64,000 bases of DNA, taken from Styela clava (taxonomy: Eukaryota). A model generated the notes under the pieces. It did not search any database and was not told where the DNA came from. It worked only from the letters and a program-made list of their open reading frames with translations. The translations under genes were made by a program, and so were the position numbers. Below are positions 13,335-53,100 of this stretch, piece by piece (within the stretch, counting starts at the first letter, position 1; each line of letters begins with the position of its first letter). The DNA is taken from contig NC_135264.1 in the NCBI RefSeq assembly GCF_964204865.1, positions 1,240,001-1,304,000 on the forward strand, given 5' to 3'.

Positions 13335-16300
13335 TAATAGCTTATCGGTTGCGTCTTTTTCGGTCAACCACGTTTGTGGACGCATTGCGCCACAGCTTGA
13401 GAAGACGTGTATCGGAAATTCAATGATATTTATGATGGCGTTTATTTCAAATACGAAGCGATATGCAAGTTTTTACATTCATTTTTGTTTATTTTTAACC
13501 TATTTAATACGAAAAAAAACAGATAATAAAACCATTATATAAAAGAGGCAGATAAAAACTCGGTTTAATTAAAACAATTGTTTTTAAACAATTGAATTTG
13601 TATTAATCCCTCATCGGTTAATCCCTCAATTGGTTAATTTCTGGCCCAAGCCTTGTTTAACAAGATTTGTGTTTTTTTTTTGTGAATGTGTGTTGGTGAG
13701 CGCGCACATAATACTCATCTTGTTTTAAACTTTTTTAAAGGTTTTGCTCACTCTCCAGAATTCTCCATTTTTAATTTGTTTGTATTGTCAGATTGCGGAG
13801 TTTCCTAATAAACTATCTATCTAATGTTTCTGAGTACAATATTATTAATTTATTCAATGACTCGGATGTATTTGCTGCTCTGTATTAATATTATATTTTA
13901 TTAATGCTGTTATTGCTTCTTTGGACAGTTACAAAAATAGCTAAGTCAGTGCTTAAAATACGAATAGCTCGTGGAGCACTCAGGTTTCTCTTCTATTTTC
14001 CATACCTACCTTCAATCCTGGCCATATCGGGTCTCTCTCTAGAAACAGAGGGAAACCATGCACCTTCACTAAAAAGATGCAGACCAGAATTTTTTTACGT
14101 AGCGGAAGATAATCATCCACCTCATTTTAGATCACCAATAAAACGATATTAATTTAAACATAACACAGTTAGCTTTTAACAGTTAACTTTTCAATTCTTC
14201 AAACATTCCAATAATTCTCTGCAGGTACAAAAGAGACAAACCTGCGGTTGCCATACTGCTCTGTTACTTGAACAGTTTATACATAAAAATAGTTATACAT
14301 ATTGACAACAAGACTTTATACGCAAACGGGCAAAGTATCCACGACATGTGTTGAATTCAGTTTTAAAGTAAATGAGTTGCCCATATCATTAATGTCCAGT
14401 TAGGTTTTTTTGGTTATTTATTAATTTAAAAAAAAAAAACTTGTCTTTTTACGCCTCCATTTGGCATTTTGATAACTTAATGGCAGTGCAGTTAACGTTA
14501 GGTGTTCAATAATCGCAATGAATATATAATACCCGTGATATAACAATATAGAGCAGTTTTCATTTCCCTGTCGTAACTAGTGAATCAGAGATAAATTGAA
14601 TGCTACGTTATAAAGAAAAAGAAAATCGTAATATAAAATAAATATTAATTGCTTCCATGCTGCATTACCGGGACATTTAAATCTACCGAGCGGGGCGCTG
14701 AAAAAGTTTGTCAACGCCGACTGTCCCGGCTAAACCGGGACCTTTGTCGAGAAATAGAATTTGAAACAACACTCTGTTACGCTTCATGGCAAAGACATTT
14801 CAGTTGAAACTTTGGATTGATACTTCCGTTAAATGCGCCATTCTAGTGTCAGAAGACCTTGATTTCCTTTACTTTCTCTTTCCTACACGTACGCAATGGG
14901 GATATGGAATACACGTGCATAGGCATTTTCGGTTATAGGCCTCAATTAGCTTTATTAAAAGATTACAAGGAATATTATGATAATAATCGTTGCCGATGCG
15001 TGAGTTCTTTACAATTTTACTTATGGTGATGCGCCAGAAGCTACTGTCGGAGAACCAAAATTAATAATTTGTATTTTGTATGACCGTCAACACGTGACAG
15101 AACACACCAAACGTATCGACCAAATAATCGTTCATTTTTAACGATGCGTGATTGCCGATACGCTCTATTGGCGTTTATAAAAGCATGGCCTCTGGAGAGA
15201 TTCGGACGTAAATAGGCATACTATTTATTTTAAAATATTTTGAAGTAAATTGCCGCTTACAAAAACGTATCCGTTCTCTCCCGCAGATCAACTCCGCTGT
15301 TCGAATTGTAGCGGCAGCGTTGTATTTGTGGCGGCATAATCGTAGTATGTAACGCCATCCATGGGAAGGTTCTCATTTTGTCAAACTTTATCGACATAGT
15401 ATATAAGCTCGTCTACAAAGATGAAGTGCGTTACACCGCAGTGGCAATAAAGCAGCAGCTTGCTTACATTAAATTCCTTAGGTGCGGTTTATATTTAGAC
15501 GTTGTATGAGTTATATTATATATATCTGACAAGGCTTGTCGATACTTGGGTGGGGTTGTTATGCTTATTCGCCACACGTTGGTGTCGTAAAATTGCAGGG
15601 AATTTCAAAGCAATTTTAGACAGCAGAATAAAGACGGGGTTCATAAAATGGTATTTGCTTTGGTACTTCGATAGACGCCGTATATAAACGTGAAAAGCGA
15701 ACACTGGACGTCGTACCACGTGCTACAGGAGTGCAGCTTGGCCACCTTTTGCATCAGCGCTTGGAATATATTTTTTAGTCTGCCCCTACCAAACGAGTCA
15801 TACAATAACATTTCATAATTTTCGGTAAGCACTGCATTATGTGGTATTGGGTTTCGTTATCATATTGAAAACCGACACCGCATATTGATCTATTACGTTG
15901 ATTTCGTGACGAATGAATGAATGCTTTTGATGAGGTTACTCGAGTTCATTTGTACAAGTGTTGATCGCACTCAAGCACATATATATTGTTACCGATGCGT
16001 AACTCAAAGGTGTGCGCTCGGTTATTGACTGTTTTTGTCAATTTGTGTATTGGAATCGCAGAATAAAAATTTCAGTTTCCAACTCATTTATGCACTAAAC
16101 CTAAATCAGCCGGAATTCATCATTCATATCCAGTTACCTTATGTTATGTCAAAAATTATGCGGCATCCTGAAAGTGAAATGTACATGGCGTACTAAAATG
16201 ATTTGGTAAAAACACGGAACTAAAGAACTCGGTCATAGCGTGCAGGTTGATTTCCTGATCTGTGACTGGTGGTCGAAATTCCATTGAACACGATCCACCT

Positions 16301-17014
16301 TGATGCGCTATTACCAAACCTCGCGCTGTTTATATCTTCTGTTAATATTATCTCTAACTATTTGATAAATTCGCCTGATCGCTACGCGAAAAATAACTTA
16401 GACGCCTCGCCATGTACTTATCAAAATTTACTCTTGATACTTTTATTGAGCGAGGTAGCTTCCTGGTATATAGAACTTTTGATATGTTATTGCATGACGG
16501 CGGCAGAGTTTATATTGCACAGTTTATCGATCACCCACCTACTACAATGAAAGACTGTAAATAGTACAGTTGACTAAGGAAGTAACGCTTGATCCAGCGT
16601 AACTACATACAACATTGCTTCGGGCGATTATGAGTTTTAACGCAGGGTGTTAAATGAGGATTACTACATTTTCGTCTAATGGCTTCTGTGAAAATATTCG
16701 TAAACCATTGCTCGTAAAATAAAGGAAGGTTGATATTCGACCATAGCAGCACTTTGATAACTAGAACTCGATCGGTGTAACGTCTATTTTACTCCGTTCC
16801 CATCGTCTGCGTAAGTAAATAGCTTTTTGTTTGTATTTTCCAGTTTCGATAAAGAATTCTGATTCAACAAATGAGAGTAGAATTTACGTCCGGGTAGCAT
16901 AAGATTGTTTCGTTGCAAAGTACGCAACAAGTTCGAGCTACTAGACTACTGACACATCAATGCATGCTCTGAAGATAATTTTTTGTGATCGAAGCCACTA
17001 CTATTAGCGTTGTC

Positions 17015-17145
17015 ATGGAAACTGCGTACGCTTGTATATGGTTTGGTAGTGTGTGCATAGTTTGGTTTCCACTGTTACCAATTTTACTTCTTTTGTCGCT
17101 GCTATGTTGTTGGTGCTGCTGTTTCCGTAGACGAAAAAAGAGTGG
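17015..17145 (+). CDS. Alternative first coding exon A1: transmembrane segment, Cys cluster and basic stop-transfer (dystonin-a2-like)
   Basis: GTCATGG start with in-frame stop upstream (16976). Encodes [44 protein letters not shown]. Donor GG|GTGAGT at 17146 is phase 2 and matches the next exon. Too short for the ORF track. Confidence 0.8.
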
Positions 17146-20100
17146 GTGAGTTGATGTAACTTAATTTTGTATTCGTTTTTTACGCAACTTAAATTAAATG
17201 CCCTCGTTAAAACTGCCCCCCATTTTTTTAACTACTGCTCCAAGAGTATCCAGAGTATAAGAAAAATGGAACCTATTCATAATATGTCTTTTTACGTTGT
17301 TAAATTGATATCTTTGACTTAAGAAAGAGGCATTTTGACACATTGCACTACATTTGCTAAAATTGTTAGAAGTGCAAATCAAAGTTCTTTTCCTAATATT
17401 CTCCATGGCCGTACTTTATGCTTATAGCACAATTCACAAATTTGCAAGGTTCGTTGTCAGCCACGCTTTATTAAGCTATTTATGGATATCGACTGACTGA
17501 TTGTTTCCAACAAATTATATTGTAGACCGGATGTCATAGAAGTGCAATACGAAACGCAAGAAGAGTTGGAATGGTCCATCTTCATTCAGAAATGGGCAGC
17601 ACGGTTCATTGCATGTGCAATATGCAGAGGTTAGCGAATAACAAAATTAATTTTTCCGAATGTACATAAAAACTATTCATTTACTCTTCTTGGAACGTTG
17701 CGGCTTCTTTGCAACTTTTTTAGTTATTGTTTTCACACCTCGTTCAAGTGTTGAGTTATTTATATGTTATCTATTAGGGCGTTGTATTTATTAATATAAG
17801 GTATCAACAATCCTATTGTCGCCATCAACTAGTTTAAACGCACATGGCAGTTTACCATTCCACAGAAATGCGATTAGTCACCTCTCGCGGAACGTGAACC
17901 GATCATGGCGCAATGTCACTGTCGATCAACGATTCATATCTGACAGTGAATATCTTACTTGCGTCAAGTGTGCTGCATTTCGTTTAAATCAGTATCATTT
18001 GTTTAAATAATATTATCATGATAGTGATACAGCTCTGTACACCCCCTGTGAGGCCGCATGTCAGCCAGAAAAATGCGAAACTTATTGTCCGATCATCGGC
18101 GATAGCAGCAAATTTGCGACCCACATTTCCAAGAACATTTCATTCTGATCCTTTCTTGTCGTGTCATTCTGATTTTCCCGTGTCGGCTTTGATAGTACTT
18201 ATCGCCGCTGTATAATAATTAGTGAACAATAACTTCGCTACTGGCTTCGACATTTGTTGTCTTTTTTCTGTTTTTATTTTTCGCTCCTACGAAAACTTCC
18301 GTCATTGCGTATACCACTAGTACGATGCGCAGCCCGTCAGTGCTGCCATCGGCCCTTAATTTGTATTTACTAGAAATTAATGCTCTAAGTACAAATAGGG
18401 TGCTGACCACCGGGACGTGTGGAATTACCCCAATATCTTAGTGCGGTGCATCATCCCGTCGAGGCGCGCCGGCGTCATGTTTGTTAATTCTGACCGAATT
18501 GAAAATAATGGCATCGCTACTAATGATATATGCCCACAGAAATCTTAGTAAATTTAAATGAAATACTTTATCACTCAATTTGCTGTTTTGAAATTTATGA
18601 ATCGACCCAAAAAAATGTTTATATGTATATCATAGGCACTGGAAATAAGTAAATAAATATTCATATCGGAAACATAACTACACAATTTTTACGCATTTAT
18701 CGAAAGGTGGCTGCAAATTCTCTCGTGTTCGTATGAAGCCATTCAAGCGTTTGATTCAACAACGTGCGAGTACATTTCATTCAAGTCGCACAGATCACGT
18801 GTTACTATGTATTCAAATAGTAAAACGCCACACGAATATTCCAATATCCGATTTGATATTCGAAAATTTTGCAGTAATTACAACTTGCCACAACAATTAG
18901 CTTAAATCTGAGAATCTTTGAAACTTTCGAAAAACAGTAATTCTTTGTTTTATTTTTGATGAAAATAACCATGTAAGTGTGACTAGTTACTCAGAACATC
19001 ATGAAGACGCATACACAAAATTCTTGGTCACTAGTGGACATTGTCGGTAGTCCCGATGAATCGCTGAAAGTCATAGCAATTCCAGTGTTATTTAATGAGA
19101 AAAATACACTTTAATATATAGTTTCGTTTTAGCACTGTACATTACGTACGTGGGTGGTTTGATAGCCATTAGTAATGGATTAAGCTCTAAATGATGATAA
19201 TCCAGGTATGATTTGGTCAACAGACATGATTGTATGAGAGAAACGTTAAGTTATACGGTACTTGGCACGTACTCAATTAGTCAGTTGAGTGGAGAAATAA
19301 TTGGAATTGAGTTTTTCCTTTTCTTAGATATTGTTAGAGATTATAAATTTATATTATTATTCATTCTTATTAAATAATGCCTTATTATTTCAGACTCATG
19401 GAACATACTGGGGACAGAAGAAGAAGCAAAATCAATCATATTTTCTGATATCTTCCAGGTAAATATAGGACGAGACATATGGCATCAAATTCATTTTGCG
19501 TTCTACATGCTCCATAAAGTATCTGTCACAATGGCATATATGCCTATTTATGTGCGAAACTTGCCATCCAATCGAAGCTTATGATTTTGTATTGTTAAAA
19601 TGGAGATCTACGTAAAAACAAAAATCTTTTTCATGGATGCAGGCTTATTTTGAAGAGGAATTTGAGAAAAAGAATACAATCAAGTGGAAAGACAGTGGAT
19701 CAGGTGAAGATGGTTCTGGTGTGAGAAGGCGAAATGTCGCAGAAAAGAACGAGGAAGGAGAAATCGAAGGACAGGTTCGTGTGCGATGTGTGTAGGGTCG
19801 CTTTTCTACTTTGTGCCTTTACGTTACAGGTGTTATTCGTTTTTTATCACGCGAAAAACTTACTCTTTGCAGTCTATTGCTTTCCTCGATGCCGTCGCTC
19901 AAAGTTGAAATGCTGTCCCGAGGGCAATAATATTATTATATCAGATAAATGAGCATTGGTACTTTAATCGTGAAACAACACGTTAAACGCCGATGCTTTT
20001 ATATATTACATTTATGTTTTACGGTTTAAGCTTTACAATTGTTTTGAGTATATTATTAGAAAGTTTATTATTGTCATTGCCATAAATGTACCGCTTTAAT

Positions 20101-23100
20101 CAGAAAGGTAACTACATCGGTTTTGAATAAGTTTGCGGTGATAAACGTTAAATTAGGAATTGTTCTCAGGAACAGTAATAAGATTTACTACACATCAAGA
20201 CGTGACCGCGACTGTGCGTAAATTTACATTTATTTATTTTCGGTTTTTGATTTGTAAATTACATGAGTTGCGTTTATTTTTCGATGTTATATGTTATGAA
20301 GTCGCGAATAAAAAGTAAGATTCAAAATTCGTTCATCACTAAAATTAACTTACTGTCACAACGTCCAAACCATTTTGGTATTTGAAAATGTTATGCTATA
20401 TATATATATATATATAAATGCATATGCATTAGGTCAGATATTTAGTTGTTAACCACAGGTTATTCATCATGTCAAACATTGTCGATTAATTGTTCAACTC
20501 GAGTTGAAAAGTTGAATACAATTACATCCCCGTTGTCATTTAAATGTATACATACATACCCATCGCCTCTCTACACCTCGACATTTGATATTGCGCCTAA
20601 GCTTGGGAAACCAAACCCTCTTCTTGCTCTCCTTGAGCCGTCCAACAGGACCATTTTGATAACGGGCGTTTTGATTGTTCGTCCAATGCACGACGCTATA
20701 GCGCGCACACTGCGTAAATTCTTTCTGTGGGTGCTTAAGAAAGACCTTAGGGTCTTGATATATTTTCAACTAAGTGCAACATTGGTCTGGTTTGATCAAC
20801 CATTCACTATGCATTTGAACGGGTAGTTTATCTTATGATAATGCTTGGTCATTGAACGGTATGTAAACGCAATTCGATTCTTTGACGTCAGCACTTCTGT
20901 GGTTATTCTACCACAGAAGTCAGTAAAGTAATGAATGCAAGGGTGCAGTCATTCGTAGCTATTAATAAATGACAGCAATTAGAAAGATAGCGGTTGGTCT
21001 TATCAGTGTGTATTTTTTATTATTTTATTATGGGCAGTTATACACGAGGAAGTCTTGTTTTATATATTTGGATATTTGCGTTTTGAATTCTACTTCTACG
21101 TTATTGTATCATAAGCCCTATTATGGGGATGTTTTAACATCGCATTTAGCTCGCAAATTTGTGCATGTAACAGTGATTAGAATAAATATCAACACAGTAA
21201 GAAGAAGAACCCTGAAAAAGCTAGTTGAAATAACTCCAATACGACAACACATACAAATGTTCTGTAAAATCAAATCACTCGTTTTAAAGTACAAATGGTC
21301 CATTGCGATTTGCCTGAGTGAACACCAATAATTTATTGTGTAGCTGCGCCTCCTATTAACGATATAAATCTCATGACATATTTGTACTAAACCTGGGTAT
21401 TTGATTAGATTTATTGTAAATCAGAAAGATTCCAGCAGTGTGGTATTTTGGCCTTTTCGGCTCAGGCTCATTTGACATTGCAGGCAGGCACAGGCCACAC
21501 AAGTTGCCATGTCTCATTAATGACAAGTATTCCGAGAACGCCGTAACAATTCGTGCAATGTAACTAATGAGACTTATTTGAAATTAAGCCGAGGCGCTGA
21601 TCAATTTATATATTCGATGAAATATAAAAATGATTTCACTTCATACTTTACTCTACGCCAGCAGCTCGTTACGATTTTTTAATTTGATATTTAGATATAT
21701 AGTAATAGCCAGAAGAAAAGTTAGGTAGGTATGAATAAAAATACAAATTTGAACGTACGACATTGGCGTGAAAATTCTTTTGGGGTTTTCGAGGATTTTT
21801 CCGTAACCGAGGTAAAGTGGACATCTCGTATTTTTCACGTTTCCAGACAGTACGCACCAAGACGCAAAATATGCTATCTTGAATCGTTTGACATTGAATC
21901 AACCGATGACGAAAATTGACACCGGTACCGGCACCAGTACCAGTATCGTACTTACGTAATGAGCTACCAGTACCGGTTAGCAGTCAGCCAGCATCTTACC
22001 TGTACACTGTAGGCCATATACGGTAATTGATCACAGAACAGTTGTTCCCTTGCAAATTTTATGTTATTTACACTTTAGGACAGATAATTGATCACAGAAC
22101 AATTCCTCCCTTTCAAATTTTATGTTGTTTCCAGTAGACTCTCATCAAAATAAACAAATATAGTAGGCTACAGGTGCTACAACGCTTGCATTACTGCACT
22201 GGTAGGACCGTGAAAGAATAAGTTACGGTAATTTCATTGTGGTAAGACACCGGTACCGGCACCAGTACCAGTATCGTACTTACGTACTGAGCTACCAGTA
22301 CCGGTACCGAACCTGTAGGTCTGATATTCCGTTCCGCATACGATAGGCTATAAAACTTGCATTGCAGCATTAGTAATACCGCGGAAGGAATAAGTCAATT
22401 TCACTGCGTTACGGCACCGGTATGGCAACTTACCAGTACCGACCTACAGTAGCTGTAGTACTGAGCAAGACAATCGATCGCGAAACCGCTTGAAATAAGT
22501 GTAAAACAGTGTTCCCATGAGTAAAAATAAATACCGCGAAATTTTGTATGAAATATCATATCTCATAGGATTCATATAAAATTTAAGAATAAACAAAAGT
22601 AATAGCCTTCTAGCGAAAAAATTAATCTTCAACCACTGAAAATTTCAAAGCAATTGGTCCAGTATTCGAAGAGAAAAGCGACTTTTTAAAAACGTGTCAA
22701 AGAACAAGAACAAGAACAACAAGAACAACAACAACATAATATTGAAACGATCGTTATGTCCACTACGTGTCCAATAAATACTAAGCTATTTCGTGTTGAT
22801 TCGACGAATCGACTTTTACTTGCAATGAAGAAGAGTTTGAAATAAATTTGAAATACAGGGGATTTATGTTGTTTTCTAAATATATTTCAAAAATATGTAG
22901 TTTCAGTAAGGTCAGTATTTGTGGTTGGATTGACCGCTGCGTTCGTTTCCAACATTTTCATGCGCTTTCACCCCACCTTACGGCGTGTGTCGTTGCCTGC
23001 GTAATAAAGTGCGTAGACATAAGCGACAAGCCAGTCACTATGTATATATGCTTCATATATTCGACTCTAATCTTTCGATAAAAAAATATGGAGAGAACAA

Positions 23101-26100
23101 TCGTGACGGTGATATTACAAGAAATCAAAGATACCGCGATTTACCTGTCCATGAACCCTGAGTTATATTTATTCAATCAAACAATGGATTGATATATAAT
23201 GTGTTATTCTCGTTCTCGCTGTTCTGTATGCCATAATAAACGAAATACATTACTGTACTTTTCTGAAGTAAGCAGGCAGTTCCGGGCCAGATTTAGTGAG
23301 ATACGTGTACCCAAAAAAATACCAGATATTAAAGTACAATTGGCAATACAATCACGATGGTAAAAATTACATTGAACTTTGTTGCTATCTGGTAAGTCAT
23401 AGTAATTTTACGATATTCTGAACATCGTCCTAATGTGTACTCCTTTAATAAATAAAGTAAATTTATGGCATAATTGTTACAAATCGGGCGTTGGCTCTCT
23501 TTGGGCTTATTATTAACCAAATGAGATATGAAACAAAATCTGAGACATTGTTCTTCGTAATATTTCGATTTCTTCCTAGAAAACTTATAAGAATAATTAT
23601 CTATGTAATATTTCAGTGTATTGGAAACTTGTTTTGTTCTAAGATTTTACCTCCTTTGTGTTCATTGGATTTTCAATACGTCTATTTTATTTGATGGATA
23701 TGCTGATTTTATTATATGGATGATGGCTGAGTTTCCTATCACATGACATTATATTATATGGGTAATCAGTACAATTTATCGTTTCATTATTCGCGATAAC
23801 GACTTGATTCCTTTAGCTTTTATAGCGATTTTCACATTTCACCTTCACACGCTCTTTGGTTATAGTAAAAGAGAATTGAAAGCTTCGGTTATTGTTCCAC
23901 ATCATGATTTTGTAGGCTGTGCGCCTGTATTTGAATAGGGACTTAAGCACACATTTGTCTGATGTACTCCGTTTTCATACAAGTTATGATACGTTGTATG
24001 CGCCCAAGCTAATATGCTTCAGCATTTATAACAAAGCATTTATATAGAGTCATAGTACGTACACACAGCAATTTTCGGTACTTGAAACAATCTGCGTAGG
24101 TATTTGACAAGTGTAACCCGAGTGATACCATGCTTTTTAAGTTTCGCGAGTATATATAAATGTCATATTGCAGCCCGGCCAGAAAAAAAACATTTAAGGC
24201 AGTTGAACGGTTGATTCCAGTCAAAGTGTAATGAAGTTTTATGGGTGAGGCATGTCAGTGATTGAAATCGAAGGAGTAAAGCTTGTTAACAGGAATGGAA
24301 CGCCAATTATTTTTTAACAATTTACTCATTTCGTTTTAGATATGATATGTGGTATGCGTTTGTTATGTGTCAAGAATTCTTGACAGGCTAGCTCTAAGTT
24401 GCTCAAAAACGTAACGGAAGAAAATAGTCTAGGAATAGAAAACACATGATATCACATCGACTGCTGAAAGCATGGAATCTCCAGATTCTGTTCCTCGAGG
24501 AGAAAGTCAATCCAAGGACCATCAAAATTTAAATGAGTGCGTCAATCTCGTTCTAGAATCGCAATCAGGCGTGTCGGAATCTGAAAATCTCGAAGAAGAT
24601 GTCTTTTTGAGCCAGGTCATAGATGACAACGATGACGAATTTTCCACTCCTCCCACCACCCCAACAACAACACGCCAGAAGTCAACTCCCCAAAACAATA
24701 AAGTTAAATCGCCATCAATAAGCACGATAATGAATAGAAATCAAACTACCGCATATTGGTGTTCGGATTCACCAGATTCTAAGGTAATTGAGATAATAAT
24801 TGTACTTTAACTCTGTGTTCGTGATCGTGTATTTAGATCTAGACATGTTTCTATTCTGACCTTAATCCAAAATTCAGATAATAAGTATTAGAGAAACGTA
24901 TACATTTATTATGTTTATATATAAAAAAAATTTGTGTCATGTTTTCAATAAATAAATAAAAATTAGGTACTAGAAAAAACATTAACATGACTTGACATGA
25001 AACTTTCAGATATCAATTGCTGATCAAGCAAGTGGAGTTCTAAGTGCTTTTGCTATTTCAATGCTCGAGGTACGTTATATTGTTTTGTTTAAAGCCTAAT
25101 TCAAAACATTTTGTGCACTAATCGCCGAGTCGGTGTGAAACAGTCCGCGCATCTCAAGTTATCAGGCAAAAACTACGAACTTACTAGAAATAAGATCAAT
25201 CAGTTAAAGTTGAATAATTTACTGATGACAAGACATGTGTAGTATGCGAGTTGTCGAAGTATAGATATGCAAGCATGCACTCCAAAGAGTTGACGAAATA
25301 TTCACAAAAATATTTGTCGCATTTTACAGGGTATAAAATATGACACAGCTATAATGATTCATTACTGTGCAATACAGCGGCGTTTCGATATTTTTAATTG
25401 ATGTAGAAATCATACTGAAGCTAACGGCCACATATTTGTAAGACTGAGATAACCCTATTGTGCATATTTGACTGAGCACTTCAACTTAATCTTTGCAAAT
25501 AATTTAGTTCATTGGCATGATAGATAATTTGGTAGACATAATAAATTCATGTTATATGAGGTCAAGTTGTAGTTGTCTTACTTATCAAATATATGATAAA
25601 CAAATGTACATATCTTGATACAAATCTCTGAGATATATTTTTATAAATTATTTTATTGCCTGCTATTTCAATATTGAGTGAAAATGAAGTTATGTTTATA
25701 AATATGCAATTACTTCAAATTCCACATTGGTTATTGAACACAGTAAACTCTGGGAACGATTCAATGGTTTTATTATACATAATTTCGTCTGAGATGGTGA
25801 TTGCTTTCGCAGGAGAATTTAGACATCAAATACGAATATAAATTCCCTTTTTTTTATTCATTTTTAAGTCTTGATTCTTCTCCATATCGTTTCCTGACTG
25901 TAGACCGCGAACGCTCTTGTTGAAACGTTCGTATTTCTAGATTATAAAAATATGTTAAGCCTATCCCACAATAAAGAATATACTCTATCTCTGGGACGTG
26001 TTTTCTTTTTAATACAAACAATTTGAGACGAACACCAATTTGCTCCAGCTGTAATTCGTTCAATTATTAGTGACATATTATAATGACGAACTTTCTGCAG

Positions 26101-29100
26101 GCCACTATAATAAAATTTTATGACTTTGAAATCATACCATATGCTCGCATGTAGTGTTGGCTCTCGGATTTCGTAATTTCACTGTCTTTCTAGATTCATG
26201 AATTTTTTATAGCACGCATGATAACGCTTTTACTGCCTCACCACCTCAACGACTAATAATATGAGTGTGTATTTTTGTATGAATCAAGCTATATCACGCC
26301 TCAATGTAACATTGGGCATAATTATTTGTTCATTTTATCCTACAAAATTGGTTTCGCAATGGGTATTTAGGGAATTTACATACTTCTTCCGAGCATGTAG
26401 GTCACGTTCAACTCAGTTTCATTTCGCAATGCATGTCCATCTGGACGTTTTCCCGTTTTGCGATTTCCCCTTTTTCTTGCAGTACAGCTCTTATCAATAA
26501 TGCATGCACCCCGCTGCGCAAATGCGTTCCAACTCACAATAAAGACGCGAAGACTTTGGAAAACGCGGGTATCTCTTTCATGCGTTTATCGTTTATCGAT
26601 TTTTTTGTTGTTAGACTTCGTCTCAAAAACAAATTTTCATTTAATAGTAGACGACTACTGATCGCACTGATCTTGGTCTCAAGTGTTACTGTACAAGCCC
26701 ATAGTTTACAGTGGGTGATTTTTAGGTAGATAGTCTCTAGATTTGAAGCATTTGATTGAAATACATTAGGCTAGCAGGTTATATATATGTCACCGTACAA
26801 GGTCTGCGTTATTTCAATTCTTTGGAATTCTGGACATATCAAGAACCTTTCAAGAAATATTTGTCGGGTTTCTGTTGTGTTTTCGCCGTTAAACTTGCGA
26901 AACATGTTTTCATATGGGAATTGAGACCACATAAACGGTTATTTGGCTTGCCTCTGCTTTACCGGTATTTCTGTTATTACTCATTGAATCAAGTCCAAAT
27001 CGTTTCTCGAAACGGCTTTAACGTTTAGCCAAGGATAATTATCTCTGGCGAATTTGAGAAAGAAGCGCTAATTAAGCTTGTACCAATAATTGTTAAAATA
27101 AATTGAGACTTCTTTAGCTGTACTGGAGCTAGGACAAAAATATATTAAAATCGCCCAGCTAGAAACGTACTTCACATTGAGACTTTACAAACTGAGCAAA
27201 TTGAAGGGATAGCTTATAGAGTTCGGAAATATCTCGAATATAATCAGTTTGTTACACAGATTGGATAAAATGATGTTTTATCAGTGTATGCGATTATGAT
27301 TTACGTTTAATATAAACTCTGTAGACAATTGTGTGACTTATTAATGAAAGATGACGGATGAAAAGAAACATGAACAAAAGTATGAAAGCTTGAATCTCAA
27401 TTTGTTTACGGAGGCTGCTTCTGACTACAAAGTCAACTCGCACAGTAAAAATGTTCAAGAGGACAAAATAAATGTAACGGAGAGATCGGATTTGGAAATA
27501 TATGACAATCAATATGGATTTAACGTTTTCGAAGAAAAAACTAACAACGAAATTAATATGGTTATCAGTATAGATTCAGATACTGATGATCATTCTCCAA
27601 CAGCTGAAAATGTTGAAGGTAGGAATAGCGATCGATTAAAACAATCGTTGTCCAGTCAAACCCTTTCTCCCGATACGCCCTCTGGCGTTGATAAAATAAT
27701 GGAAAATATCGATCAATTAATTCAGATCAAATTAGCCATATCTGAAGGGAACATCCCAAATGATGCTTCGTCGGATGAGATACTAGATTATGTTAAAGCA
27801 GATACAATGGAAATGAGGAAAGAAAACAACACTACTCGTCGTTTCCAGGATGTACAAGAAGCAAACACCCCAGAAGAAGGAATCCATGAAAACCAACGAT
27901 TATCTATTTTGAGTGTCGATAGCTCAGCCGATGGAGATTTGGTAATCGATGAAAATACCATAACTGTAACTGAACCAAGCAGTTCTTACGAAACAACAGA
28001 AAATACAATCAAACTTTGGGATAAGATGCTAGGAAATCGCGATACACATTATGATAGATTCGTATCGTCTTGCCCAGAAAAACTTTATCTGAGTTGCACG
28101 AGAGATACCGCTGCGGCCAGCAATGAGTTGGCTGGCACACAAAATATTCATTCTCGTTCGGGTTCTTTTCATAGCAACGATGGAAAATTTGAACTAGTCG
28201 GAATAAGCGGAACTTGCAAAATTACTGGAAGTAGTAGCGTGACCTCTGATCTTTTTCGGTCGTCTGGCCAGGAAAGTCCACAAAAAGATGACTCATCCGA
28301 TGAGATTGAAGATATGTGCCTTGACGCGATACGAAGACTGTCTCTGAGCGCCCCAGAGCATCTTTCGCGTCATAATAGTCGGGACGAATTTGACAACAAG
28401 TCAACAGCTACGCCTATTACTACAGGTACCGCCTCACCTTTTATGTTTTCTAATGAGGCACAAGAAGCACTTGGTGATGACGAATTAAGATATAGATTTG
28501 CTTTTTGTTCTGATAATAGCGGCCCTACAACTGATGTTGAGAGTGCATATGATAGAGATATTGATATGTTGTCGGAGGAAGGATGTCTCGATAGAGACGG
28601 CATTCTGAAAGAAGAAGATCTACGACGTGCTATTTTTGATGCGTTTCACGATCTCAATTGCAGTCACACACATGCGACTTCTTTGCAACCGGGCGTCACT
28701 TGTGATTCACTGGAATTGGTCGGAGATTATGACGTTGTGCCAACCGACAATTTACCTGGGGGTGGAAATAAGAATGAAGGGACTGGTGATCCAGTCAAAT
28801 ATCATTCTTCAGATGACGACTGTAATTTTCCGCTCCACCATAGTAATAGTAAATCTTATGCCCCTTCAAATGGTATTCTCTTGGATAATGAACGACGACA
28901 TACATTGCGGAGCCTCTTGATGAATGCCCCTCCAGTGCCAATACTACATCCTCATGCCAGTGCCGATCATAATACACCTGATGGAGATAATATTAACGAA
29001 AATGCTTCAGAATGCAATGGTACGGATCTGGAAATGGATGCAGTCGATTCTATATCATTTACTGCTTTAAAAAACCACAGAGCAAATGAGGCCAGCACTG

Positions 29101-32100
29101 GGCGTCTTGTATCTCCGAAAGTTGAACAAGAAACTGAAGAGCAACCTTCATTTGAGACCAATCAAAACTTAAATCTACATATTCAAAACATAGGTGAACA
29201 AATATTTCCCGACGATCCAGATTCTTGTCGTGATTCCGCCTTCTATGGCTCCAGAGAAGATACTTCACCAGATATGCCTTCGTTACCCACCGTTACAATC
29301 GACTACTTCGTATCAACAGATACTTCTATCCAGCGTATGGATGGATCTTCTCCGGACCGGGACGGGTCTTTAATAATCGAGAAAGAAGATCTTGATTCGG
29401 ACAATGATCTTTCAATGACGCCTTCCATGTCAATAAGCAGTTTTCTTCCTTCTGAGACACAGTCTGTGAATATTCCCTTTTCGATGACCTCGAAATTTTC
29501 AACCTCACCAGAAACACATGTGACTGCTGCATCATCGCTCCCGGAATACAATTTTGCACAACATGAAGGTGGAATAAATTTACAAAACGTAACAAAGAAA
29601 AAAAGAAATAAAAAAATGTCTCGAAGAGCAAATTCAAAAACCGGAAATGAAACTAATAGAGTAGCTGCATCCGATGCGTCTCAAATCAAATCGAAGCAGA
29701 GGACAATCACGCGAAGCACCTCGACATCGAAAAGAAAATCAAGCCCTGTCAACCGTAAATGCATGCTATCATTAAGTCAAACTAATTCTCAAGTGCTGAA
29801 AATTAATGAAAAAGCCAGTGCTGGGCGTACTTCCGTTTCTCTCGCTTCTTCAAGACAATTACAATCAAGAAAAAGCAACTGCTCGTCCATGGTAAACTCG
29901 GATCACAAAATAACAGACATAAACAGAAAAATGAAGAAGAAAGTTCCAAAACAACACAAACCTAATACGCTGACATTCAAACCAGATGATGTAAAATTAC
30001 GGCCACCAACGAGACGAGGGAGGGATGCCACGAAGCGTAGATCATGGCCTCCAATGCTGTCTGATCAATCGTTCAAAAAAGTAGGCTTGAAACGATCTCT
30101 ATCTTTTCGCGACGGAATAAATAGGATCAACAGTTTGACCAATGGCTACAAAGACTTCGTCCCTCTGTCTCCCGAGAAAAGAGATATAAGTCGTCGCGCC
30201 CACAGTGAAGGTTCCGTTGCTTCTTCCCAACTCACAATTTTTAGACAAAGTAATAAAATTGGAAGACTTCTAGAAAGTAATAGGAGGCATACTGAAAACC
30301 GAATTACACCGAGAGGGACACTTAGAGATCGTCAACCAGGGGAAAAGTATGATAAGAAGGCTGCGAAAACTCAGAATTTAGCTTCTGCAAAGAAAAGCAC
30401 AAATGCGAGAAAAATACGCAAAAAAGATGACCAGGCTCAACGAAAGGCAAGCAGCTCAACTGAAAGTTTTGCTAAAGAAAACTTGTACAGTTCTGAACCA
30501 AGCCACGTTACAAAGATGTCTTCAAAAAGTTCCCGAAGCAGATCGTCGAGATTATATAGATCTTCTTGTTCTGAAGAAGGTTTACGTCGTCAACGAAATC
30601 CATCTTCAAGTCAGGACCGTTCACCAACTGTAAGATCTCGTATCACTTCCAACTCTAGCGCTCCAAGTACAAAAACTCCACCGAATACGCGGAAACCGTC
30701 TATTCCCCGAAAGTCGGCTCCAGATTTTATACAGCAAAATCGAATTAAGTCAACACGACAAAAACCCATTGGGGCCATCAGAGCGCTCGGTAGCAATCTA
30801 CAAAAAGCATCGGAATTGTCTAAATTGAGAAGAAAAATAAGGGCCCCAGAAATCAAGAATTATTCCTCTCGGAAAGCGCATACATTTGAAAAATCTTTGA
30901 AGAAGAATAAGAGCCCAGTAAAACCAAAAATATACAAGGCAATGCATAAGGTAAGGTCGGTTCGATAGTATTGTTTTGACGAAATCGTATTGCATCCACT
31001 GTTTGTTTCACTGTTTTATCATGTTTTGCTGGTGAAAAGTTGTAAGAAAAATCTGTCATCCCTGTTAGTATTTTCAAGTAATGTTTCCTCTCAAATGACC
31101 ATCTATCCGTTTGCAGTTGACAATTATAAAATTTTACAGTGCGTGCCGAGATCGTTAAAGCGTATAGTAACAGACGATATCACCGACCAGAAAAATTAAC
31201 TATAGAAAAGTAAATGAAGCTTTTAATACTCTGCAGTTTTTTATGACCTTTTAACTATTATAATCACTAGTTTAGTAGCATCGCAAATTGGTAACATAAA
31301 CTTGTGATGGGTCAGTGAACCGGAAATTGCTTCCGTTTCTACGATTTCCTTCCGTTAGGTATGGGTTAAAAAAGGGGATTTTGTATATCTATAATTCAAA
31401 CTCGGCCAAAAATGGTATGGTTAAAGATTTGAATGTCTCGTTGTTGAGTTTTTATGTCGTCATTTGTTTGCTCATGAGCATGCAGAAAGCTCTATACCTA
31501 TATTCTGTTGCATTGTGTTCATAGTCTTTATGATATGTGGTTGTTGAGTTAACAGCATGTCTGTCGATAGTTAGCAAGTCAGTCATTTTATCAACAGTTC
31601 TTACGATGAAGTTAATTTTTGAAGGTGCTTCTCGAGTTTTGAATGTGTAACGCTAAGGTAAAACTTGACGAAGTAGTCCTGTTGCTAAAACAATAGTTTT
31701 ATCGCAAAATTATTTAGGATATGTTACGTCGGGTGTTCTAACACTTGATATTGCAGTGTTCCTCCCCTCGAAAATTGTCCCAATATTACAATAGAAAATT
31801 TATTCATTTCACCTAACAAGATTTGAAAGTATGTAATCTGGAATACAGCAATTCGTTTCATTTTAACCTCGTTTTTATTTTATTTTAATCTATATTTGGG
31901 CTTTGCGCTCACGTTCGAACATGTACATTCGTTTTCTTAAGCATCAATATTTGATTAAATTAGCTTTGGGATTGCACCAGATGTGTTTCAATCGGATTCC
32001 GAATAAAGAGCTCATAGCACGCTATCGAGCGTGATTTATTAATGAAATACGACAACAAATCACCGCTCAAGATCGGTTAATATAATATACGACCGGGACT

Positions 32101-35100: not shown

Positions 35101-38100
35101 GAGGATATGTCCATATTGTTTACGTTTTGATTAGCTGTTCTCCGAAATCAGAATCGAGTATCCCTATGATATCATCTCTAATGTAAACGATTCGCTTGAA
35201 GAAAATTGTATTTTTAAAGTAAACGAACTAAGGCAACTATGAAGATTATATAACGAAAATGTACTAAGGTGTTGATTGAAACAACCCAGAAACTAATTTT
35301 TTCTCCTAATAAATAGTTGATTTCATTCCCAACGACTCTTTCTTATGAACAATTTTGGAGATGTTGTTCTCCGTTTTGGCGCCACACCCTGCAGCGCTTG
35401 GTGAAATCACGGCTAACATCGGCCTTGTCGTCATGGTTTCGGTGTGAAAATATCCTAGCAAAGCCAGTCATTAAAACACTTCAGTCCCTCAATGTCTTTG
35501 TTGTTCACCGAATTCTTTTCAAGGATTTGCGTTATCGATTTTTATGTTTTCTTGGATTTCACATTGGTCTTTCTATATTCATACTTGACGGACATTTTTG
35601 AGCTCTTGATCTAATGATATCGTCTTTGTCTACCTTGCTTAGGAAGCTTTCTTAAGGCGTATGCCAAAAATGAATTAGATAGCCAGGCAATATAATATAT
35701 ATACCTGCTCTATAAACAGTGGCCGTCACTACCGGGTAAATTTAGGTCAAATATCAAATTCATTTTGGAATACTTGTTTTTTCCTTTCTGTGATGATGTA
35801 ATCCTAACATCTGGTCAGATGGAATCAGTCTAGCCTCCGTTTCTGAACCTTCTGTGAAGTCATAATATATACCTTGCAATCGATGATCACATGTGTGAAC
35901 ATCACCGGCTTAATAGTTCATATAAGCTACAGCAAACGTTATAAATTATTGTCAAATGTCAAGCCATTTCTGAGACAGGAAGAATTTTTACACGGAAATC
36001 TGAGTCGGATTCAAAAAATGCTGTATTAGTTCCAGTTTAATCCAGTCTTTTATAACGCCACTAAGTTTCTTGTGAGTTGCGACGGTAATTATCTTTATTC
36101 TGGAAATCATTGCACTGTTCTCATTTCTCGGGCAAGATTCAGTTATGAATTTTAACATAGATTGAGTTGATTTAGTATTAATTTAAAGCTGGTCGAGTGG
36201 TCGAACCTGGTGTCTTCGACAGTAATTTGAAAAAGCTTCCAAACTTCTATTAAGAAAACAACCTCATTCATGATCGTTGAGTCTGAGCATACCTATACGG
36301 CACTACTCTGGACGGATTGCAGTACCATATTTACCCCAGTTCTTAATTTATAGCTAGTATTCATTTTAATTGCAGAGACCAATGTCAGGCAGCGATGATA
36401 CCTTAGGGGAGGCCTCCCCCAACCTCCCATGGAATCGTACACAACATAATTATCAGAACAAAGAGAATAATGAAGCGACGATTTTGAACGCTGCGGAAAG
36501 GGCAGTCATCCGTATCGCTGGTGAGTCACTTCGTATTTCATTCATTATTCATAAATTTGTCTCCGTGTTCAATGCTTTCAAGTATGTATGGTACAGTCTC
36601 TTAAGCTCTAGCTTGATGGAAATGGACATTTTTGATATTATCATGCAAAAAAAATACAATCTCTAAAGAACTAGAGCGGTATCTGATGAGCTGTGTCTTG
36701 AAGCTGAAACACCGAAATGTTTCTGAAGTTTTTATTTAAAAAAGCTTTCAGTCTGCGGCTTCTGCCAGAATACGTGACTCTGAAATTTATCTCAAAGTGG
36801 TAAATTATTCATGCGTTTTTGGATTTAAAAAAAAAGTATATTCCCTTCAATACTCCCGAGAGCGTCGTATCGCAATCTATGTTTAGCAATTTCTAAATGG
36901 GTACAAATCCCACAGTAATTCACTTTCCAACATCAGAGTTGGGATAAATATATAGTTTTAATAGTCATTCGACTGGCATCCTGCATAGCGGGCTTATTGG
37001 CCTGCCACAGTGATAGTGGCTTCGATTTTGCGGCGGCCACGCAAGCTCCTATCAACTGGGGTGTATCCAGTGGTGGGATTCAAATCTTTTGTCAGCCGGT
37101 TCCATCATACAACTGTCGAATTTTCAGGCGGTTCTGTTACAAAAAGTCATGTAATGCTAACCGGTTCGCTGATCTCATAAAATTCATAGAACCAGTGCGA
37201 ACCGGTTGAATCCCACCATTGGATGTATTGTATTAAAAAATTTCTTTTAATGTTCTCAAAGATCTCTAGCCCGAATCACCTCTCCGGATAGCGCATACCC
37301 GCTGCCCTAACCCGTAGTTGTAATTCTCAACAATATTGCCCGGTAATGATGGTAACCTCATTGAAATTCTAAAATCTGCTATCGACACTTGTGTTAGTAT
37401 TAATTAACAATGATTCGAAACGTGGACTATATATTGACGAAATAGAGGTTGAAAGCGAGATCATGCCTAATTAAGCATAATCTTGCCATTATAATCGCCA
37501 GAATTGATTATTGATTGAATGTAAAATGGATTTGTTCTTATTTTCCATATGTTAAAGCGGATTGTTGGTTTATAGTAGTACTCTGAATGAAGCGTGATCG
37601 CTTACATGTGAATTTAGCGGTTTTTAAATTTCAGTCTCTACCAGCTGTAATTTGGTCATATTAGAGACATAGCGTGTTTAAATACTTCCGGAAAATGCGC
37701 TATGAGTGATTTATAACTTGTCAATTGGAAATGTGATTTTTATGAATTAAAACGAGAGGATTGAGCGTGGGATAGCATATTTAGATAATTTTATGAAGTT
37801 TCTTTCGGTTTTTAGCATAAGCACAGTAACAATTTGTATCTTGCTCAGCATGCGTAGTAAGGATGAAAATTGATATAGCGAACAAACGACAAGTCTTTTT
37901 ATGTAATATAATATAATAAATCAAGAAAAATGCACTTTTCCCTGACGTGAACAATTTTGGGCTTCGGATTCTAATTTTGGTCCTATCCTGTTTTTACTTT
38001 TTGTTGAATGCGGCCACGGGTTTCACAACAGTGGCATACGGTTAGGGGCATTCAGGGATACCTATCAAAGAGGAGAAAAAAGTACCAAACTTTCATTGAG

Positions 38101-50100: not shown

Positions 50101-53100
50101 AGTAGGTGAAGAGGATTACCTTAGTCAAACCACTGTGGTGCAGTATTCAACATCAGTGCGTCAGGAATATACTCAGGAAGAAAAACAAGAATCTGGAAGG
50201 AGGGAGGAAGAGGAGGAGGAAGAAGAAGATATTGATATGTGGCGATCAAGAAGAGTAACTTCGGAAAATCCCGATTACAATGATAGCATTGAATCGAAAA
50301 TTGATGAAGGGAGAGGTGGAATACATTTTAAATTTAGGATTATTATTTCTGTTTCGCAACCTCTAGTGTCATTAGTTATACAAGCTTAATCAGAAAAGGT
50401 TGATTAGCACTATATGAATATATCAGTCGCACTAAACTTCACGTGGTACTTGCGAGAACATTTTAATTCTCTTGAAATTAAGGGTTTAGACGCTATGTAG
50501 TGAACTTTCGTTTCAAAATTGGCTACGCCCTTATTGAAACGTTTATTACTGCTTAGTGCGATGTGTGCATATTATTATAGAAAATGGTACTGGTCGATAG
50601 TTTATAGCCGATTTGCGATTTGTCAAAGCAGTCTTCATGGCTCTTCAGTAAATAACATTTCCTATGCAAACACCGTAAACACGTGTCAGGATAAGAACGC
50701 CACTAGTGCTCACTTTTAATCTTAATGTCCTACCACGTCATGTAAATGGTTTGTGTGTGGGAACATGGAACGTTCAATTTTTCAGTGTTGATTCAAACGT
50801 TAGCATAATCGCCGCGAGTGTTCCGTATATTACCTTTATAAGCAATGCTGTGGTTTGGTTGTCGTAAAATTCTTTTCGGGATTGGATGGATTTATAGTTT
50901 GTATATTTTGAAATTCTTAAAGCTGATTTTGGCTTTACTAAGAATTGAATTTATTTTGCTATGGGAATGAACCGAAATGGCTCGAGTTTAACGTTTCAAT
51001 GATGCCTACGGCATGTGCGTGTGGTCGATGTCAAAATCACTTTAATATGGATAGAAGTTGTCGTAAATCATATTTATAATATAACGCGACTGCTTCCCAT
51101 GGTTGGGTTTCTATTTCTTCAAAGTATCCACGATAAAAAGCTACTAATTTGCTGTCGTTTTTTGTAGTGTCATTATTGAAGAAACAAGTATAAGATTTCT
51201 ACTTATACGTGTCAAAACTTCATATTATTGTTCGATCACAACGGGCATTAATAACAAGCATTATCCTATATAAGATATCCCAGGCTAATCTCAATATGTT
51301 GAATTCATTGATATTTCGCCACAGGGTTCTGTAGGCTTGTGCGTTAATGAAACTCGATATCGACCTAGCTGAATTAGCAAGGTATAATATGAATGTTGTA
51401 TCAACACATAATAGAATGCTATTCCATGTATATGTATGAGTGACTCGAGACTAAAGAATTCCATTCGGGTGTATCGTAGCGTTCGAATCTCTTTATTTCG
51501 CATCGAAAAAACGATTAACTAGCAATTTTGAATGAGTTCATTTCAGTGCGATTTCATTTTTCAACCAACTTGTATTTTTTGGCTTTGAACTGATGACAAA
51601 GTCAACACTGTATAACACTTTGAATTGGACATGGAATTTGACGAACTTGATATAATTCATAGTTTCAACAAATTAATTTTTATTTCAGATGAACGCGACA
51701 AAGTACAGAAAAAGACATTTACAAAATGGATAAACAAGCATTTAGTCAAGGTATGTGTATATTTTTTAGATACTTTTGACATCGCAGTACATGAGCATAA
51801 ATTGGTTCAGTCGAATCTAATAAGAAATATTTTCAGTGTTATAGTTCCATCTTCGACTATAAGTATTTAAAATGACTGCATGGGATTGCGCAGCGACATT
51901 TATGGGAGGGATATAGTAGGGTAAACCTTGCATTTTATGCTCAAGTTTTAGAATTCCTAATAACCAACACCAACAACAAACGACCCGTATTATCGTAAAT
52001 TACCAGCTCTTTTATTATCTCGTTGAAGCCACTTTGTGAGCATAAATGTGTTGTAGACGTGAACAACTTTCCTCGGGCTATTGTATTACTTTATTTTTTT
52101 TTTAATGACTTACCTACCAACTGGTGTGTCAATGGTGGCTTTGCTTGGTGATTAAAATCCGCTGTATGGATCCATGTTTCGTAGGAGAAGAATACTTATT
52201 ATTGACTCACTTATGGACCAGCCATGAACGCATGATGACATTCGCGCCTGACCTTGATTGCTCATATATATCATTGCGGGTATACTCTTCTTTAAGGCGG
52301 CTATTTCATAGGACTTCTTTTCCTCAGCTACCTTCTGATAATGTGAAGACAAAATCGAAATCCCCGTTTTACGCAAGCCCTATTATTTGTAATTAACACA
52401 GTGCCTTTAGTGATTACTCGTTAATTGCCGATTCCGATGCATCGGTCGTACGTATTCGAAAACCGTTATCATGACACCAGCTACCAAATAACCCATAACC
52501 TCTTTTGTACTTCTGGATAAAAACGATTTTCGAAGTTCCCAGTTATGTGCAGTGCAATATTACATTATATTAATTTATTACAGACCCGAAGACAAGTGGA
52601 TAATTTATATGAAGATTTGAGAGATGGCCACAACTTGATCGCATTACTGGAAGTTTTATCTGGCGAAACCTTGGTGAGATTATTTTCGTTTTATGTAATC
52701 AGTTTAGTCGCTCAAACAAGCGTAAGTTTTGTATGGAATACTCTTATAGAGAATAGAATTAAATTTCCCGCCAAAACCATATTCGTTGCTTTGGATTATT
52801 GTTTGTTATTTCACTTCTGTATTAGGACAGAAATAATACGTTTTGATAAGATTCTCTCGTTTCTGCTTTTGTTGAAGGCATATAATTTTGTTGGAGTCCC
52901 AATTATTTTTTTGCGAAGCAGCGTGTTGTCGACTTTCCCATGGTTATAGATCTTCGCGTGGTCTTCGAAAAATCCAGCAAGTGACAACGTTTACTTTTAG
53001 AAATGGAAATTTTCATTAAGATGCCGATTTTGGACTTGAATATAGTTTTCATGAAATCGCGTGACAAAATATTGACGACTACTTCAGTCATTTACATTCT

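What the first reader, a model, noticed from the sequence alone, without database searches (positions are those of the whole stretch)
17015..19774. Hidden four-exon membrane-anchored N-terminus absent from the ORF track
Seen: four small exons chain without stops through phases 2, 1, 0, 0. They begin with a ~25-aa hydrophobic stretch followed by CCWCCCF and RRRKK. Known: dystonin-a2 has an N-terminal TM followed by a CCW-basic motif (recalled) that targets ER/perinuclear membranes. Inference: this is a signal-anchored, probably palmitoylated isoform with the actin-binding domain cytosolic, implying deep conservation of a membrane-tethered spectraplakin.
Basis: partly seen in the sequence, partly recalled or inferred. 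Interest (0 to 1): 0.75.

Follow-up and report, generated by a model that had tools for sequence, protein, structure and literature searches.

The report
Membrane-anchored start of sea-squirt spectraplakin
Four small expressed exons in the sea squirt Styela clava, filed in the public annotation as a separate unnamed gene, are spliced in RNA onto the lead exon of the giant cytoskeletal linker gene downstream and would give it a membrane anchor like that of mammalian dystonin-a2.

Summary
The four exons (17015-17145, 17526-17629, 19394-19458, 19643-19774; phases 2, 1, 0, 0) are real and transcribed. Spliced GT..AG contigs join them in 4 of 4 runs laid, from 3 studies.

Exon 1 encodes a very hydrophobic stretch of about 32 residues, then CCWCCCF and RRRKK.

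In 2 of 4 runs, both from one study, the contig runs from exon 4 straight into an exon at 36376-36520. That exon ends in AERAVIRIA and matches the lead of plectin-1 in PDB 3f7p, where it lies directly before the CH1 sequence. Its phase fits the CH1 exon at 51689. I did not see the last junction in RNA.

The window is Styela clava, a tunicate. NCBI files the four exons as a separate 161-aa "uncharacterized protein LOC144411898", with a different last exon at 24557-24607.

I found no sequence relative of exon 1 in 1.84 billion representative proteins. Homology to dystonin-a2, palmitoylation and membrane targeting therefore remain inference.

Best reading: an alternative, signal-anchored 5' lead of the single tunicate spectraplakin, a new member of a known kind.

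The parts
16873..17014 (+). 5' untranslated part of exon 1. RNA contigs begin at 16873 (X6), 16912 (X2) and 16928 (X1) and lie on the genome without an upstream joint. Two short upstream ATGs sit at 16960 and 16964. The nearest in-frame stop is at 16976.
17015..17145 (+). Exon 1 coding part: a short N-terminal stub (META), a hydrophobic stretch of about 32 residues, CCWCCCF, then RRRKK. It ends in phase 2 with donor GG|GTGAGT.
17526..17629 (+). Exon 2 (own-frame peptide [34 protein letters not shown]). It ends in phase 1. No Pfam family matches.
19394..19458 (+). Exon 3 ([21 protein letters not shown]). It ends in phase 0.
19643..19774 (+). Exon 4 (acidic and Gly-rich, ends ...EGEIEGQ). Phase 0, donor CAG|GTTCGT. 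Reading through the donor gives 6 more codons and a TAG at 19793-19795.
24557..24610 (+). Alternative last coding exon of the NCBI model XP_077965718.1 ([17 protein letters not shown] plus stop). Its acceptor is ttctag|AAT. It lies inside a longer ORF in another frame. I did not test it against RNA.
36376..36520 (+). Exon 5, the plakin lead exon (…SPNLPWN…AERAVIRIA plus G). It starts in phase 0 and ends in phase 1. The 30 loose letters shown behind 19774 in X1 and X2 equal its first 30 bases.
51689..51750 (+). First CH1 exon (AT|GAA… = [21 protein letters not shown]). It enters in phase 1, which fits exon 5. I inferred the junction with exon 5 and did not see it in RNA.

Best explanation
Exons 1-4 are an alternative 5' lead of the single Styela clava spectraplakin gene.

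Shown:
- Transcription starts at or before about 16873.
- The exons are spliced E1-E2-E3-E4, and E4 is spliced to E5.

Inferred from reading phase and from plectin:
- E5 joins the CH1 exon at 51689.

Inferred from sequence:
- The first roughly 37 residues act as a reverse signal-anchor. The N-terminal stub is very short and uncharged to acidic, the core is long and very hydrophobic, and five basic residues follow it.
- Such a segment should be caught by SRP and inserted into the ER membrane with the N-terminus in the lumen. The actin-binding domain and the giant rod would then stay in the cytosol, tethering actin and microtubules to ER or perinuclear membranes, as reported for mammalian dystonin-a2.
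- The five cysteines of CCWCCC sit at the cytosolic end of the helix, the usual place for S-acylation.

Possible but not shown here:
- Short products that carry the anchor alone: the 161-aa NCBI model, or a product of about 151 aa by read-through of the exon 4 donor.
For: -: X1 (683-nt record) and X2 (699-nt record) hold 5'UTR-E1|E2|E3|E4 with GT..AG joints. Both then carry 164 further letters, and the first 30 shown (the tool prints no more) equal window 36376-36405. X5 holds E2|E3|E4 and X6 holds E1|E2|E3.
- the phases fit. E4 ends in phase 0, E5 starts in phase 0 and ends in phase 1, and the CH1 exon enters in phase 1.
- in PDB 3f7p_A (plectin-1), residues 23-67 align to E5 residues 10-48 with LPWN and 9 of 9 AERAVIRIA. 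Residues 69-88 align to the CH1 exon (E 2.1e-07). One residue lies between them, where the split codon G|AT falls.
- the downstream exons match plectin and MACF1 CH1, CH-domain pieces, and the plakin SH3_10 domain (1.7e-07).
- mean hydropathy of aa 5-27 is 2.16. The five residues after the hydrophobic stretch carry +5, and the N-terminal flank carries -1.
- the exons are single-copy in the genome.
- dystonin-a2 precedent.
Against: - I did not see the E5-CH1 junction. The contigs carry 19 letters beyond E5 that the tool did not print.
- The E4-E5 link comes from 2 of 4 runs laid, both from one study (P1).
- The runs are labelled 'RNA?' as a guess. Only their splicing shows that they are RNA.
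- NCBI models E1-E4 with a different last exon as a separate gene.
- X5 has a 214-nt contig (19706-19919) that runs unspliced over the exon 4 donor.
- No relative of E1 was found (2 hits: the NCBI protein itself and a spurious repeat protein), and none of the NCBI protein (itself only, among proteins of 89-282 aa).
- I ran no dedicated TM or topology predictor. A review notes that another group disputed the dystonin TM report.
Confidence: 0.7

Rival explanations
1. A separate small gene. The four exons make only a small single-pass membrane protein of 151-161 aa (NCBI LOC144411898) nested at the 5' end of the spectraplakin locus. On this reading the E4-E5 contigs are minor read-on or chimeric transcripts.
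For: -: the NCBI model XP_077965718.1 joins E4 to 24557-24607, with a good acceptor.
- in X5 a contig reads through the exon 4 donor, which would add 6 codons and a stop.
- GENCODE also lists a truncated dystonin form that carries the TM part.
Against: -: in X1 and X2 a single contig passes from E4 into E5 without a break. No contig that I laid shows the 24557 junction, but that place was outside the stretch laid.
- E4 ends in phase 0 and E5 opens in phase 0.
- Other unspliced intron pieces exist (X2, 21268-21435), so the X5 piece may be pre-mRNA.
- Both products may coexist, which would not refute the main reading.
Confidence: 0.15
2. A mitochondrial outer-membrane signal anchor like plectin 1b, rather than an ER anchor.
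For: (PMC2426950, passages): the plectin 1b lead has a TM at aa 5-27 and a net positive C-terminal flank, and it inserts into the outer mitochondrial membrane. The Styela lead has the same layout, and the gene is related to plectin.
Against: The same paper stresses moderate hydrophobicity (mean 1.491). The Styela segment scores 2.16 over aa 5-27 and 2.49 at best, and it is about 32 residues long, which favours SRP and the ER. The plectin 1b lead is one exon of 38 residues; here there are five exons.
Confidence: 0.1
3. Another topology. The 32-residue stretch, with prolines at positions 19 and 22, forms a hairpin or wedge with both ends in the cytosol, or it is a cleaved signal peptide.
For: The stretch is longer than a plain 20-residue helix and has the pair of prolines WFPLLP near its middle.
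Against: There is no small-residue cleavage motif before the basic cluster. A cleaved signal would put a cytoskeletal linker inside the ER lumen. Thirty-two residues is short for a full hairpin. I ran no predictor.
Confidence: 0.05

Closest known systems
Dystonin-a2 / BPAG1a2 N-terminal transmembrane lead (mouse, human)
   Same: Both are isoform-specific leads upstream of the CH1 exon of a spectraplakin that begin with a TM segment. Papers report ER, nuclear-envelope and perinuclear targeting with a cytosolic actin-binding domain. An a2-specific siRNA sense strand printed in PMC3279385 reads FLLLLL in one frame (translated by hand), so that lead is Leu-rich as well.
   Different: No tool could give me the dystonin-a2 sequence, so homology is untested. 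The Cys-Trp-basic motif in dystonin is recalled only. The Styela lead has no detectable relative. The host is a tunicate with one spectraplakin, not a vertebrate DST paralogue. PMC3352338 calls the TM domain unique to dystonin-a2 among spectraplakins.
Plectin isoform 1b signal-anchor (exon 1b)
   Same: Both have an N-terminal TM at about aa 5-27 with a positive C-terminal flank on a plakin with an actin-binding domain.
   Different: Plectin 1b is moderately hydrophobic (1.491), mitochondrial and encoded by one exon. The Styela lead scores 2.16-2.49, carries a cysteine cluster and spans five exons.
Plectin-1 lead seen in PDB 3f7p (…LPWN…AERAVIRIA before CH1)
   Same: Exon 5 of the Styela lead aligns to it, with 9 of 9 identities at the end and the same position directly before CH1.
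   Different: The whole-database E-value is only 0.54, because the match is short. In Styela this exon is internal to the TM isoform. It also has an in-frame ATG at 36382.
Microsomal reverse signal-anchors (N-lumenal, C-cytosolic), as in cytochrome P450s. This comparison comes from established knowledge, not from a call.
   Same: Both have a very short N-terminal stub and a hydrophobic core followed by a basic cluster.
   Different: Here the passenger is a giant cytoskeletal linker, and the helix ends in a CCWCCC cluster.

Membership tests
Alternative 5' lead of a spectraplakin/plakin gene | Spliced in RNA to a lead exon of the plakin gene | tested here: met
   in X1 and X2 (2 of 4 runs laid) the contig passes from 19774 into letters equal to 36376-36405.
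Alternative 5' lead of a spectraplakin/plakin gene | That lead exon is joined to the CH1 exon | tested here: inconclusive
   The phases fit, and the two parts are contiguous in plectin 3f7p_A, residues 23-67 and 69-88. The 19 letters after E5 in the contigs were not shown.
Alternative 5' lead of a spectraplakin/plakin gene | Downstream exons encode CH domains and a plakin domain | tested here: met
   plectin 1.2e-07 and MACF1 3e-07. CH-domain pieces (below the Pfam cut-off, being exon fragments) and SH3_10 at 1.7e-07, above the cut-off.
Dystonin-a2-type TM lead | TM segment at the extreme N-terminus, with the basic flank on the C-terminal side | tested here: met
   (hydropathy and charge count only; no dedicated predictor).
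Dystonin-a2-type TM lead | Sequence homology to the vertebrate a2 lead | not testable with these tools
   No tool returned a dystonin-a2 sequence. The search with E1 found no relative, but representatives at 50% identity may be other isoforms. The two primary papers are not held.
Dystonin-a2-type TM lead | ER, nuclear-envelope or perinuclear localisation | not testable with these tools
   Needs a tagged construct.
Plectin-1b-type mitochondrial signal anchor | Moderate TM hydrophobicity (1.491 in plectin 1b) | tested here: not met
   2.157 over aa 5-27 and 2.491 for the best 23-residue window. One search gives the plectin value.
Plectin-1b-type mitochondrial signal anchor | Net positive charge just after the TM | tested here: met
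   RRRKK, +5.
S-acylated juxtamembrane cysteine cluster | Cysteines at the cytosolic end of the TM | tested here: met
   CCWCCC directly before RRRKK.
S-acylated juxtamembrane cysteine cluster | Acyl groups actually attached | not testable with these tools
   Needs acyl-biotin exchange or a similar assay.

The most novel reading that the evidence does not exclude
The membrane-anchored isoform is ancestral. On this reading the single spectraplakin of the common ancestor of tunicates and vertebrates already carried a TM lead beside an [13 protein letters not shown] lead and an S10-type lead. Dystonin-a2 (ER) and perhaps plectin 1b (mitochondria) would be its descendants, and MACF1 would have lost it. 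The anchor may also be released as a small membrane protein of its own (151-161 aa) that competes with or regulates the giant form.
Probability: 0.35. Interest if true: 0.6.

Novelty: new member of a known kind. Interest (0 to 1): 0.45.

Why it matters
A review held here calls the TM domain of dystonin-a2 unique among spectraplakins (PMC3352338). Another notes that the TM report itself was disputed (bioRxiv 10.1101/122010).

An expressed TM lead on the single, unduplicated spectraplakin of a tunicate would matter in two ways. It would argue that membrane tethering is an old and selected feature of this family. It would also offer a simple chordate in which to test what the tether does. Loss of dystonin-a2 causes ER stress and sensory neurodegeneration in mice (PMC3279385).

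There is a practical consequence too. The public annotation splits this lead off as an unnamed gene, so comparative surveys of spectraplakin isoforms would miss it.

Tried and rejected
Searches that found nothing:
- Exon 1 (44 aa) against 1.84 billion representative proteins gave 2 hits. One is the NCBI protein of this locus. The other is a 1682-aa tandem-repeat protein that matches 16 residues 30 times, which I take as spurious.
- The NCBI protein against 5.8 billion proteins, restricted to 89-282 aa, returned itself only among 35 candidates.
- Pfam on each exon alone gave nothing above any cut-off.
- I thought exon 2 might hold a second TM or an amphipathic helix. I rejected this: its best 18-residue hydropathy is 1.18 and its hydrophobic moment is at most 0.34.

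Other checks:
- The loose end at 21918 is not an exon joint of this gene. The letters before it lie at 22216-22245, and the 60 bases at 21918-21977 repeat at 22246-22305.
- I asked whether another exon shares the last letters of E5, which could explain why the contigs stop 19 letters after it. None does, so this stays unexplained. A polymorphism at that point is one possibility.

Literature:
- Searches found no description of a TM lead on a tunicate or other invertebrate spectraplakin.
- What I saw of each paper: 10.1101/122010, passages. PMC3279385, passages and reference list. PMC3352950, passages. PMC3352338, passages. PMC9145010, passages. PMC2426950, passages.
- Supplements are closed. 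Supplementary Figure S3 and the tables of PMC9145010 may list tunicate plakin sequences that I could not see.

Full report
**What is there**

The window is AT-rich eukaryotic DNA with no N. On the + strand an ATG at 17015 opens a frame that reads [43 protein letters not shown] and ends at a GG|GTGAGT donor at 17145. Three more small exons follow, all with AG/GT borders: 17526-17629, 19394-19458 and 19643-19774. I first placed the exon 1/2 border one base off and corrected it from the joints.

The hydrophobic stretch is exceptional. Its best 19-residue Kyte-Doolittle mean is 2.67, and only 1 of 682 stop-to-stop segments of 40 aa or more in the six frames of the window reaches that value. The nearest in-frame stop upstream of the ATG is at 16976, and two short upstream ATGs lie at 16960 and 16964.

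**Is it expressed, and how is it spliced?**

A search for sequencing runs listed 12 runs of one organism. Four runs from one sample hold 0.90-0.94 of the sampled words, as DNA would. Six hold 0.07-0.14, about the share that the exons make of the stretch. Two hold next to none.

I laid 4 of the 12 runs on 16000-21999: X1 and X2 from study P1, X5 from P2, X6 from P3. All are Logan contigs labelled 'RNA?' as a guess, but the contigs are spliced at GT..AG. The results:
- The E1-E2 joint is in 3 of 4 runs (X1, X2, X6).
- The E2-E3 joint is in 4 of 4.
- The E3-E4 joint is in 3 of 4 (X1, X2, X5).
- Contigs begin at 16873, 16912 and 16928 with no upstream joint, so exon 1 is a first exon.
- In X1 and X2 one contig holds all four exons and then 164 more letters. 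The first 30 shown, AGACCAATGTCAGGCAGCGATGATACCTTA, are the first 30 bases of an exon at 36376.

Three results count against a simple picture:
- This last link comes from one study only.
- X5 has a 214-nt contig (19706-19919) that crosses the exon 4 donor unspliced, which would add six codons and a stop at 19793.
- X2 has a further unspliced piece in the intron (21268-21435), which suggests that some pre-mRNA is present in these runs.

**Where the transcript goes next**

The exon at 36376-36520 opens in phase 0, as exon 4 ends. It encodes …SPNLPWN…AERAVIRIA and ends in phase 1 at G|GTGAGT. The first CH1 exon (51689-51750) has a strong acceptor and enters in phase 1. The split codon G|AT gives D, followed by [20 protein letters not shown].

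In the solved structure 3f7p chain A (plectin-1), residues 23-67 align to exon 5 with LPWN and 9 of 9 AERAVIRIA. The E-value is 0.54, weak because the match is short. Residues 69-88 of the same chain align to the CH1 exon at E 2.1e-07. So the two parts are contiguous in a vertebrate plakin, with one residue between them, just where the split codon lies.

Downstream exons match CH-domain pieces and the plakin SH3_10 domain.

I infer the E5-CH1 junction and did not see it. The contigs hold 19 letters beyond exon 5 that the tool did not print. I left out the joined E1-E5-CH1 model and neither searched nor folded it.

**Whose gene it is**

Exon 1 searched alone against 1.84 billion representative proteins found two proteins.
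- One is a tandem-repeat protein that matches 16 residues 30 times, which I take as spurious.
- The other is a 161-aa protein identical over residues 1-44. NCBI names it 'uncharacterized protein LOC144411898 [Styela clava]', XP_077965718.1.

The NCBI protein is E1-E4 exactly as read here, followed by 17 residues encoded at 24557-24607 behind a ttctag acceptor. So the public annotation files the four exons as a separate small gene with another last exon.

The exons are single-copy in the genome. The NCBI protein has no relative among proteins of 89-282 aa in 5.8 billion sequences (itself only).

**How it most likely works**

The N-terminal flank (META) carries -1. The five residues after the hydrophobic stretch carry +5. 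By the positive-inside rule, which is established knowledge and not a call, such a segment inserts with its N-terminus outside and the rest in the cytosol. This is the only topology that makes sense for an actin-binding domain.

Mean hydropathy over aa 5-27 is 2.16. Plectin 1b, whose similar layout sends it to the outer mitochondrial membrane, is reported at 1.491 (PMC2426950). The higher value and the length of about 32 residues favour SRP and the ER.

The CCWCCC cluster sits at the cytosolic edge, where S-acylation usually occurs. This is a prediction only.

One allele, seen in X6, differs at five places in exon 1. Read by hand, these give two synonymous changes plus Ala4Thr and Leu26Phe, which keep the segment hydrophobic. 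This is a very small sample.

**Comparison with what is known**

Papers held here state that dystonin-a2 has an N-terminal TM domain that places it at the ER and at perinuclear membranes (PMC3279385, PMC3352950, PMC3352338; passages). A review adds that another group disputed this, and that no function is known for the lead sequences of Drosophila Shot (10.1101/122010).

PMC3352338 calls the TM domain unique to dystonin-a2 among spectraplakins. PMC9145010 places the plakin/spectraplakin split at the common ancestor of tunicates and vertebrates, and the DST/MACF1 duplication later.

My searches found no TM lead described for a tunicate or other invertebrate spectraplakin.

I could not obtain a dystonin-a2 sequence from any tool, and the two primary papers are not held.

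**Verdict**

The exons form an expressed alternative lead that RNA joins to the plakin lead exon, with a convincing signal-anchor sequence. Homology to dystonin-a2, acylation, localisation and the last junction are untested, and a short anchor-only product may coexist.
- It is a new member of a known kind and of moderate interest.

Noticed in passing
window 49157-50315: A 386-codon first exon with a full Plectin/S10 domain (Pfam S10_plectin, 1.8e-32). It has a GT donor at 50316 in phase 1, which fits the CH1 exon directly.
   Followed up: partly
window 24472-24786: An ORF that opens with ATG and reaches a TCTAAG|GTAATT donor in phase 0, so it would fit exon 5 as yet another first exon. The last exon of the NCBI small-gene model lies inside it in a different frame.
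   Followed up: partly
window 27351-30968: An open frame of 1205 codons, rich in serine and charged residues, with no Pfam family. It lies in the intron between exons 4 and 5, and the X1/X2 contigs skip it.
   Followed up: no
window 21918-21977 and 22246-22305: A 60-base direct repeat rich in ACCGGTACC-like units. RNA contigs over about 22000-22305 have very high depth (139-612) in all 4 runs laid, far above the spectraplakin exons. This could be an abundant repeat-derived or separate transcript.
   Followed up: partly
window 21268-21435: A 168-nt unspliced contig in X2 only (depth 4.9) inside the long intron. It could be pre-mRNA or an unannotated exon.
   Followed up: no
window 36382: Exon 5 has an in-frame ATG six bases after its acceptor (RP-M-SGSDD…). 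The same exon could therefore start translation in transcripts that lack exons 1-4.
   Followed up: no
window 16960-16978: Two short upstream ATGs in the 5' untranslated part of exon 1. The in-frame one is closed by a stop within a few codons.
   Followed up: partly
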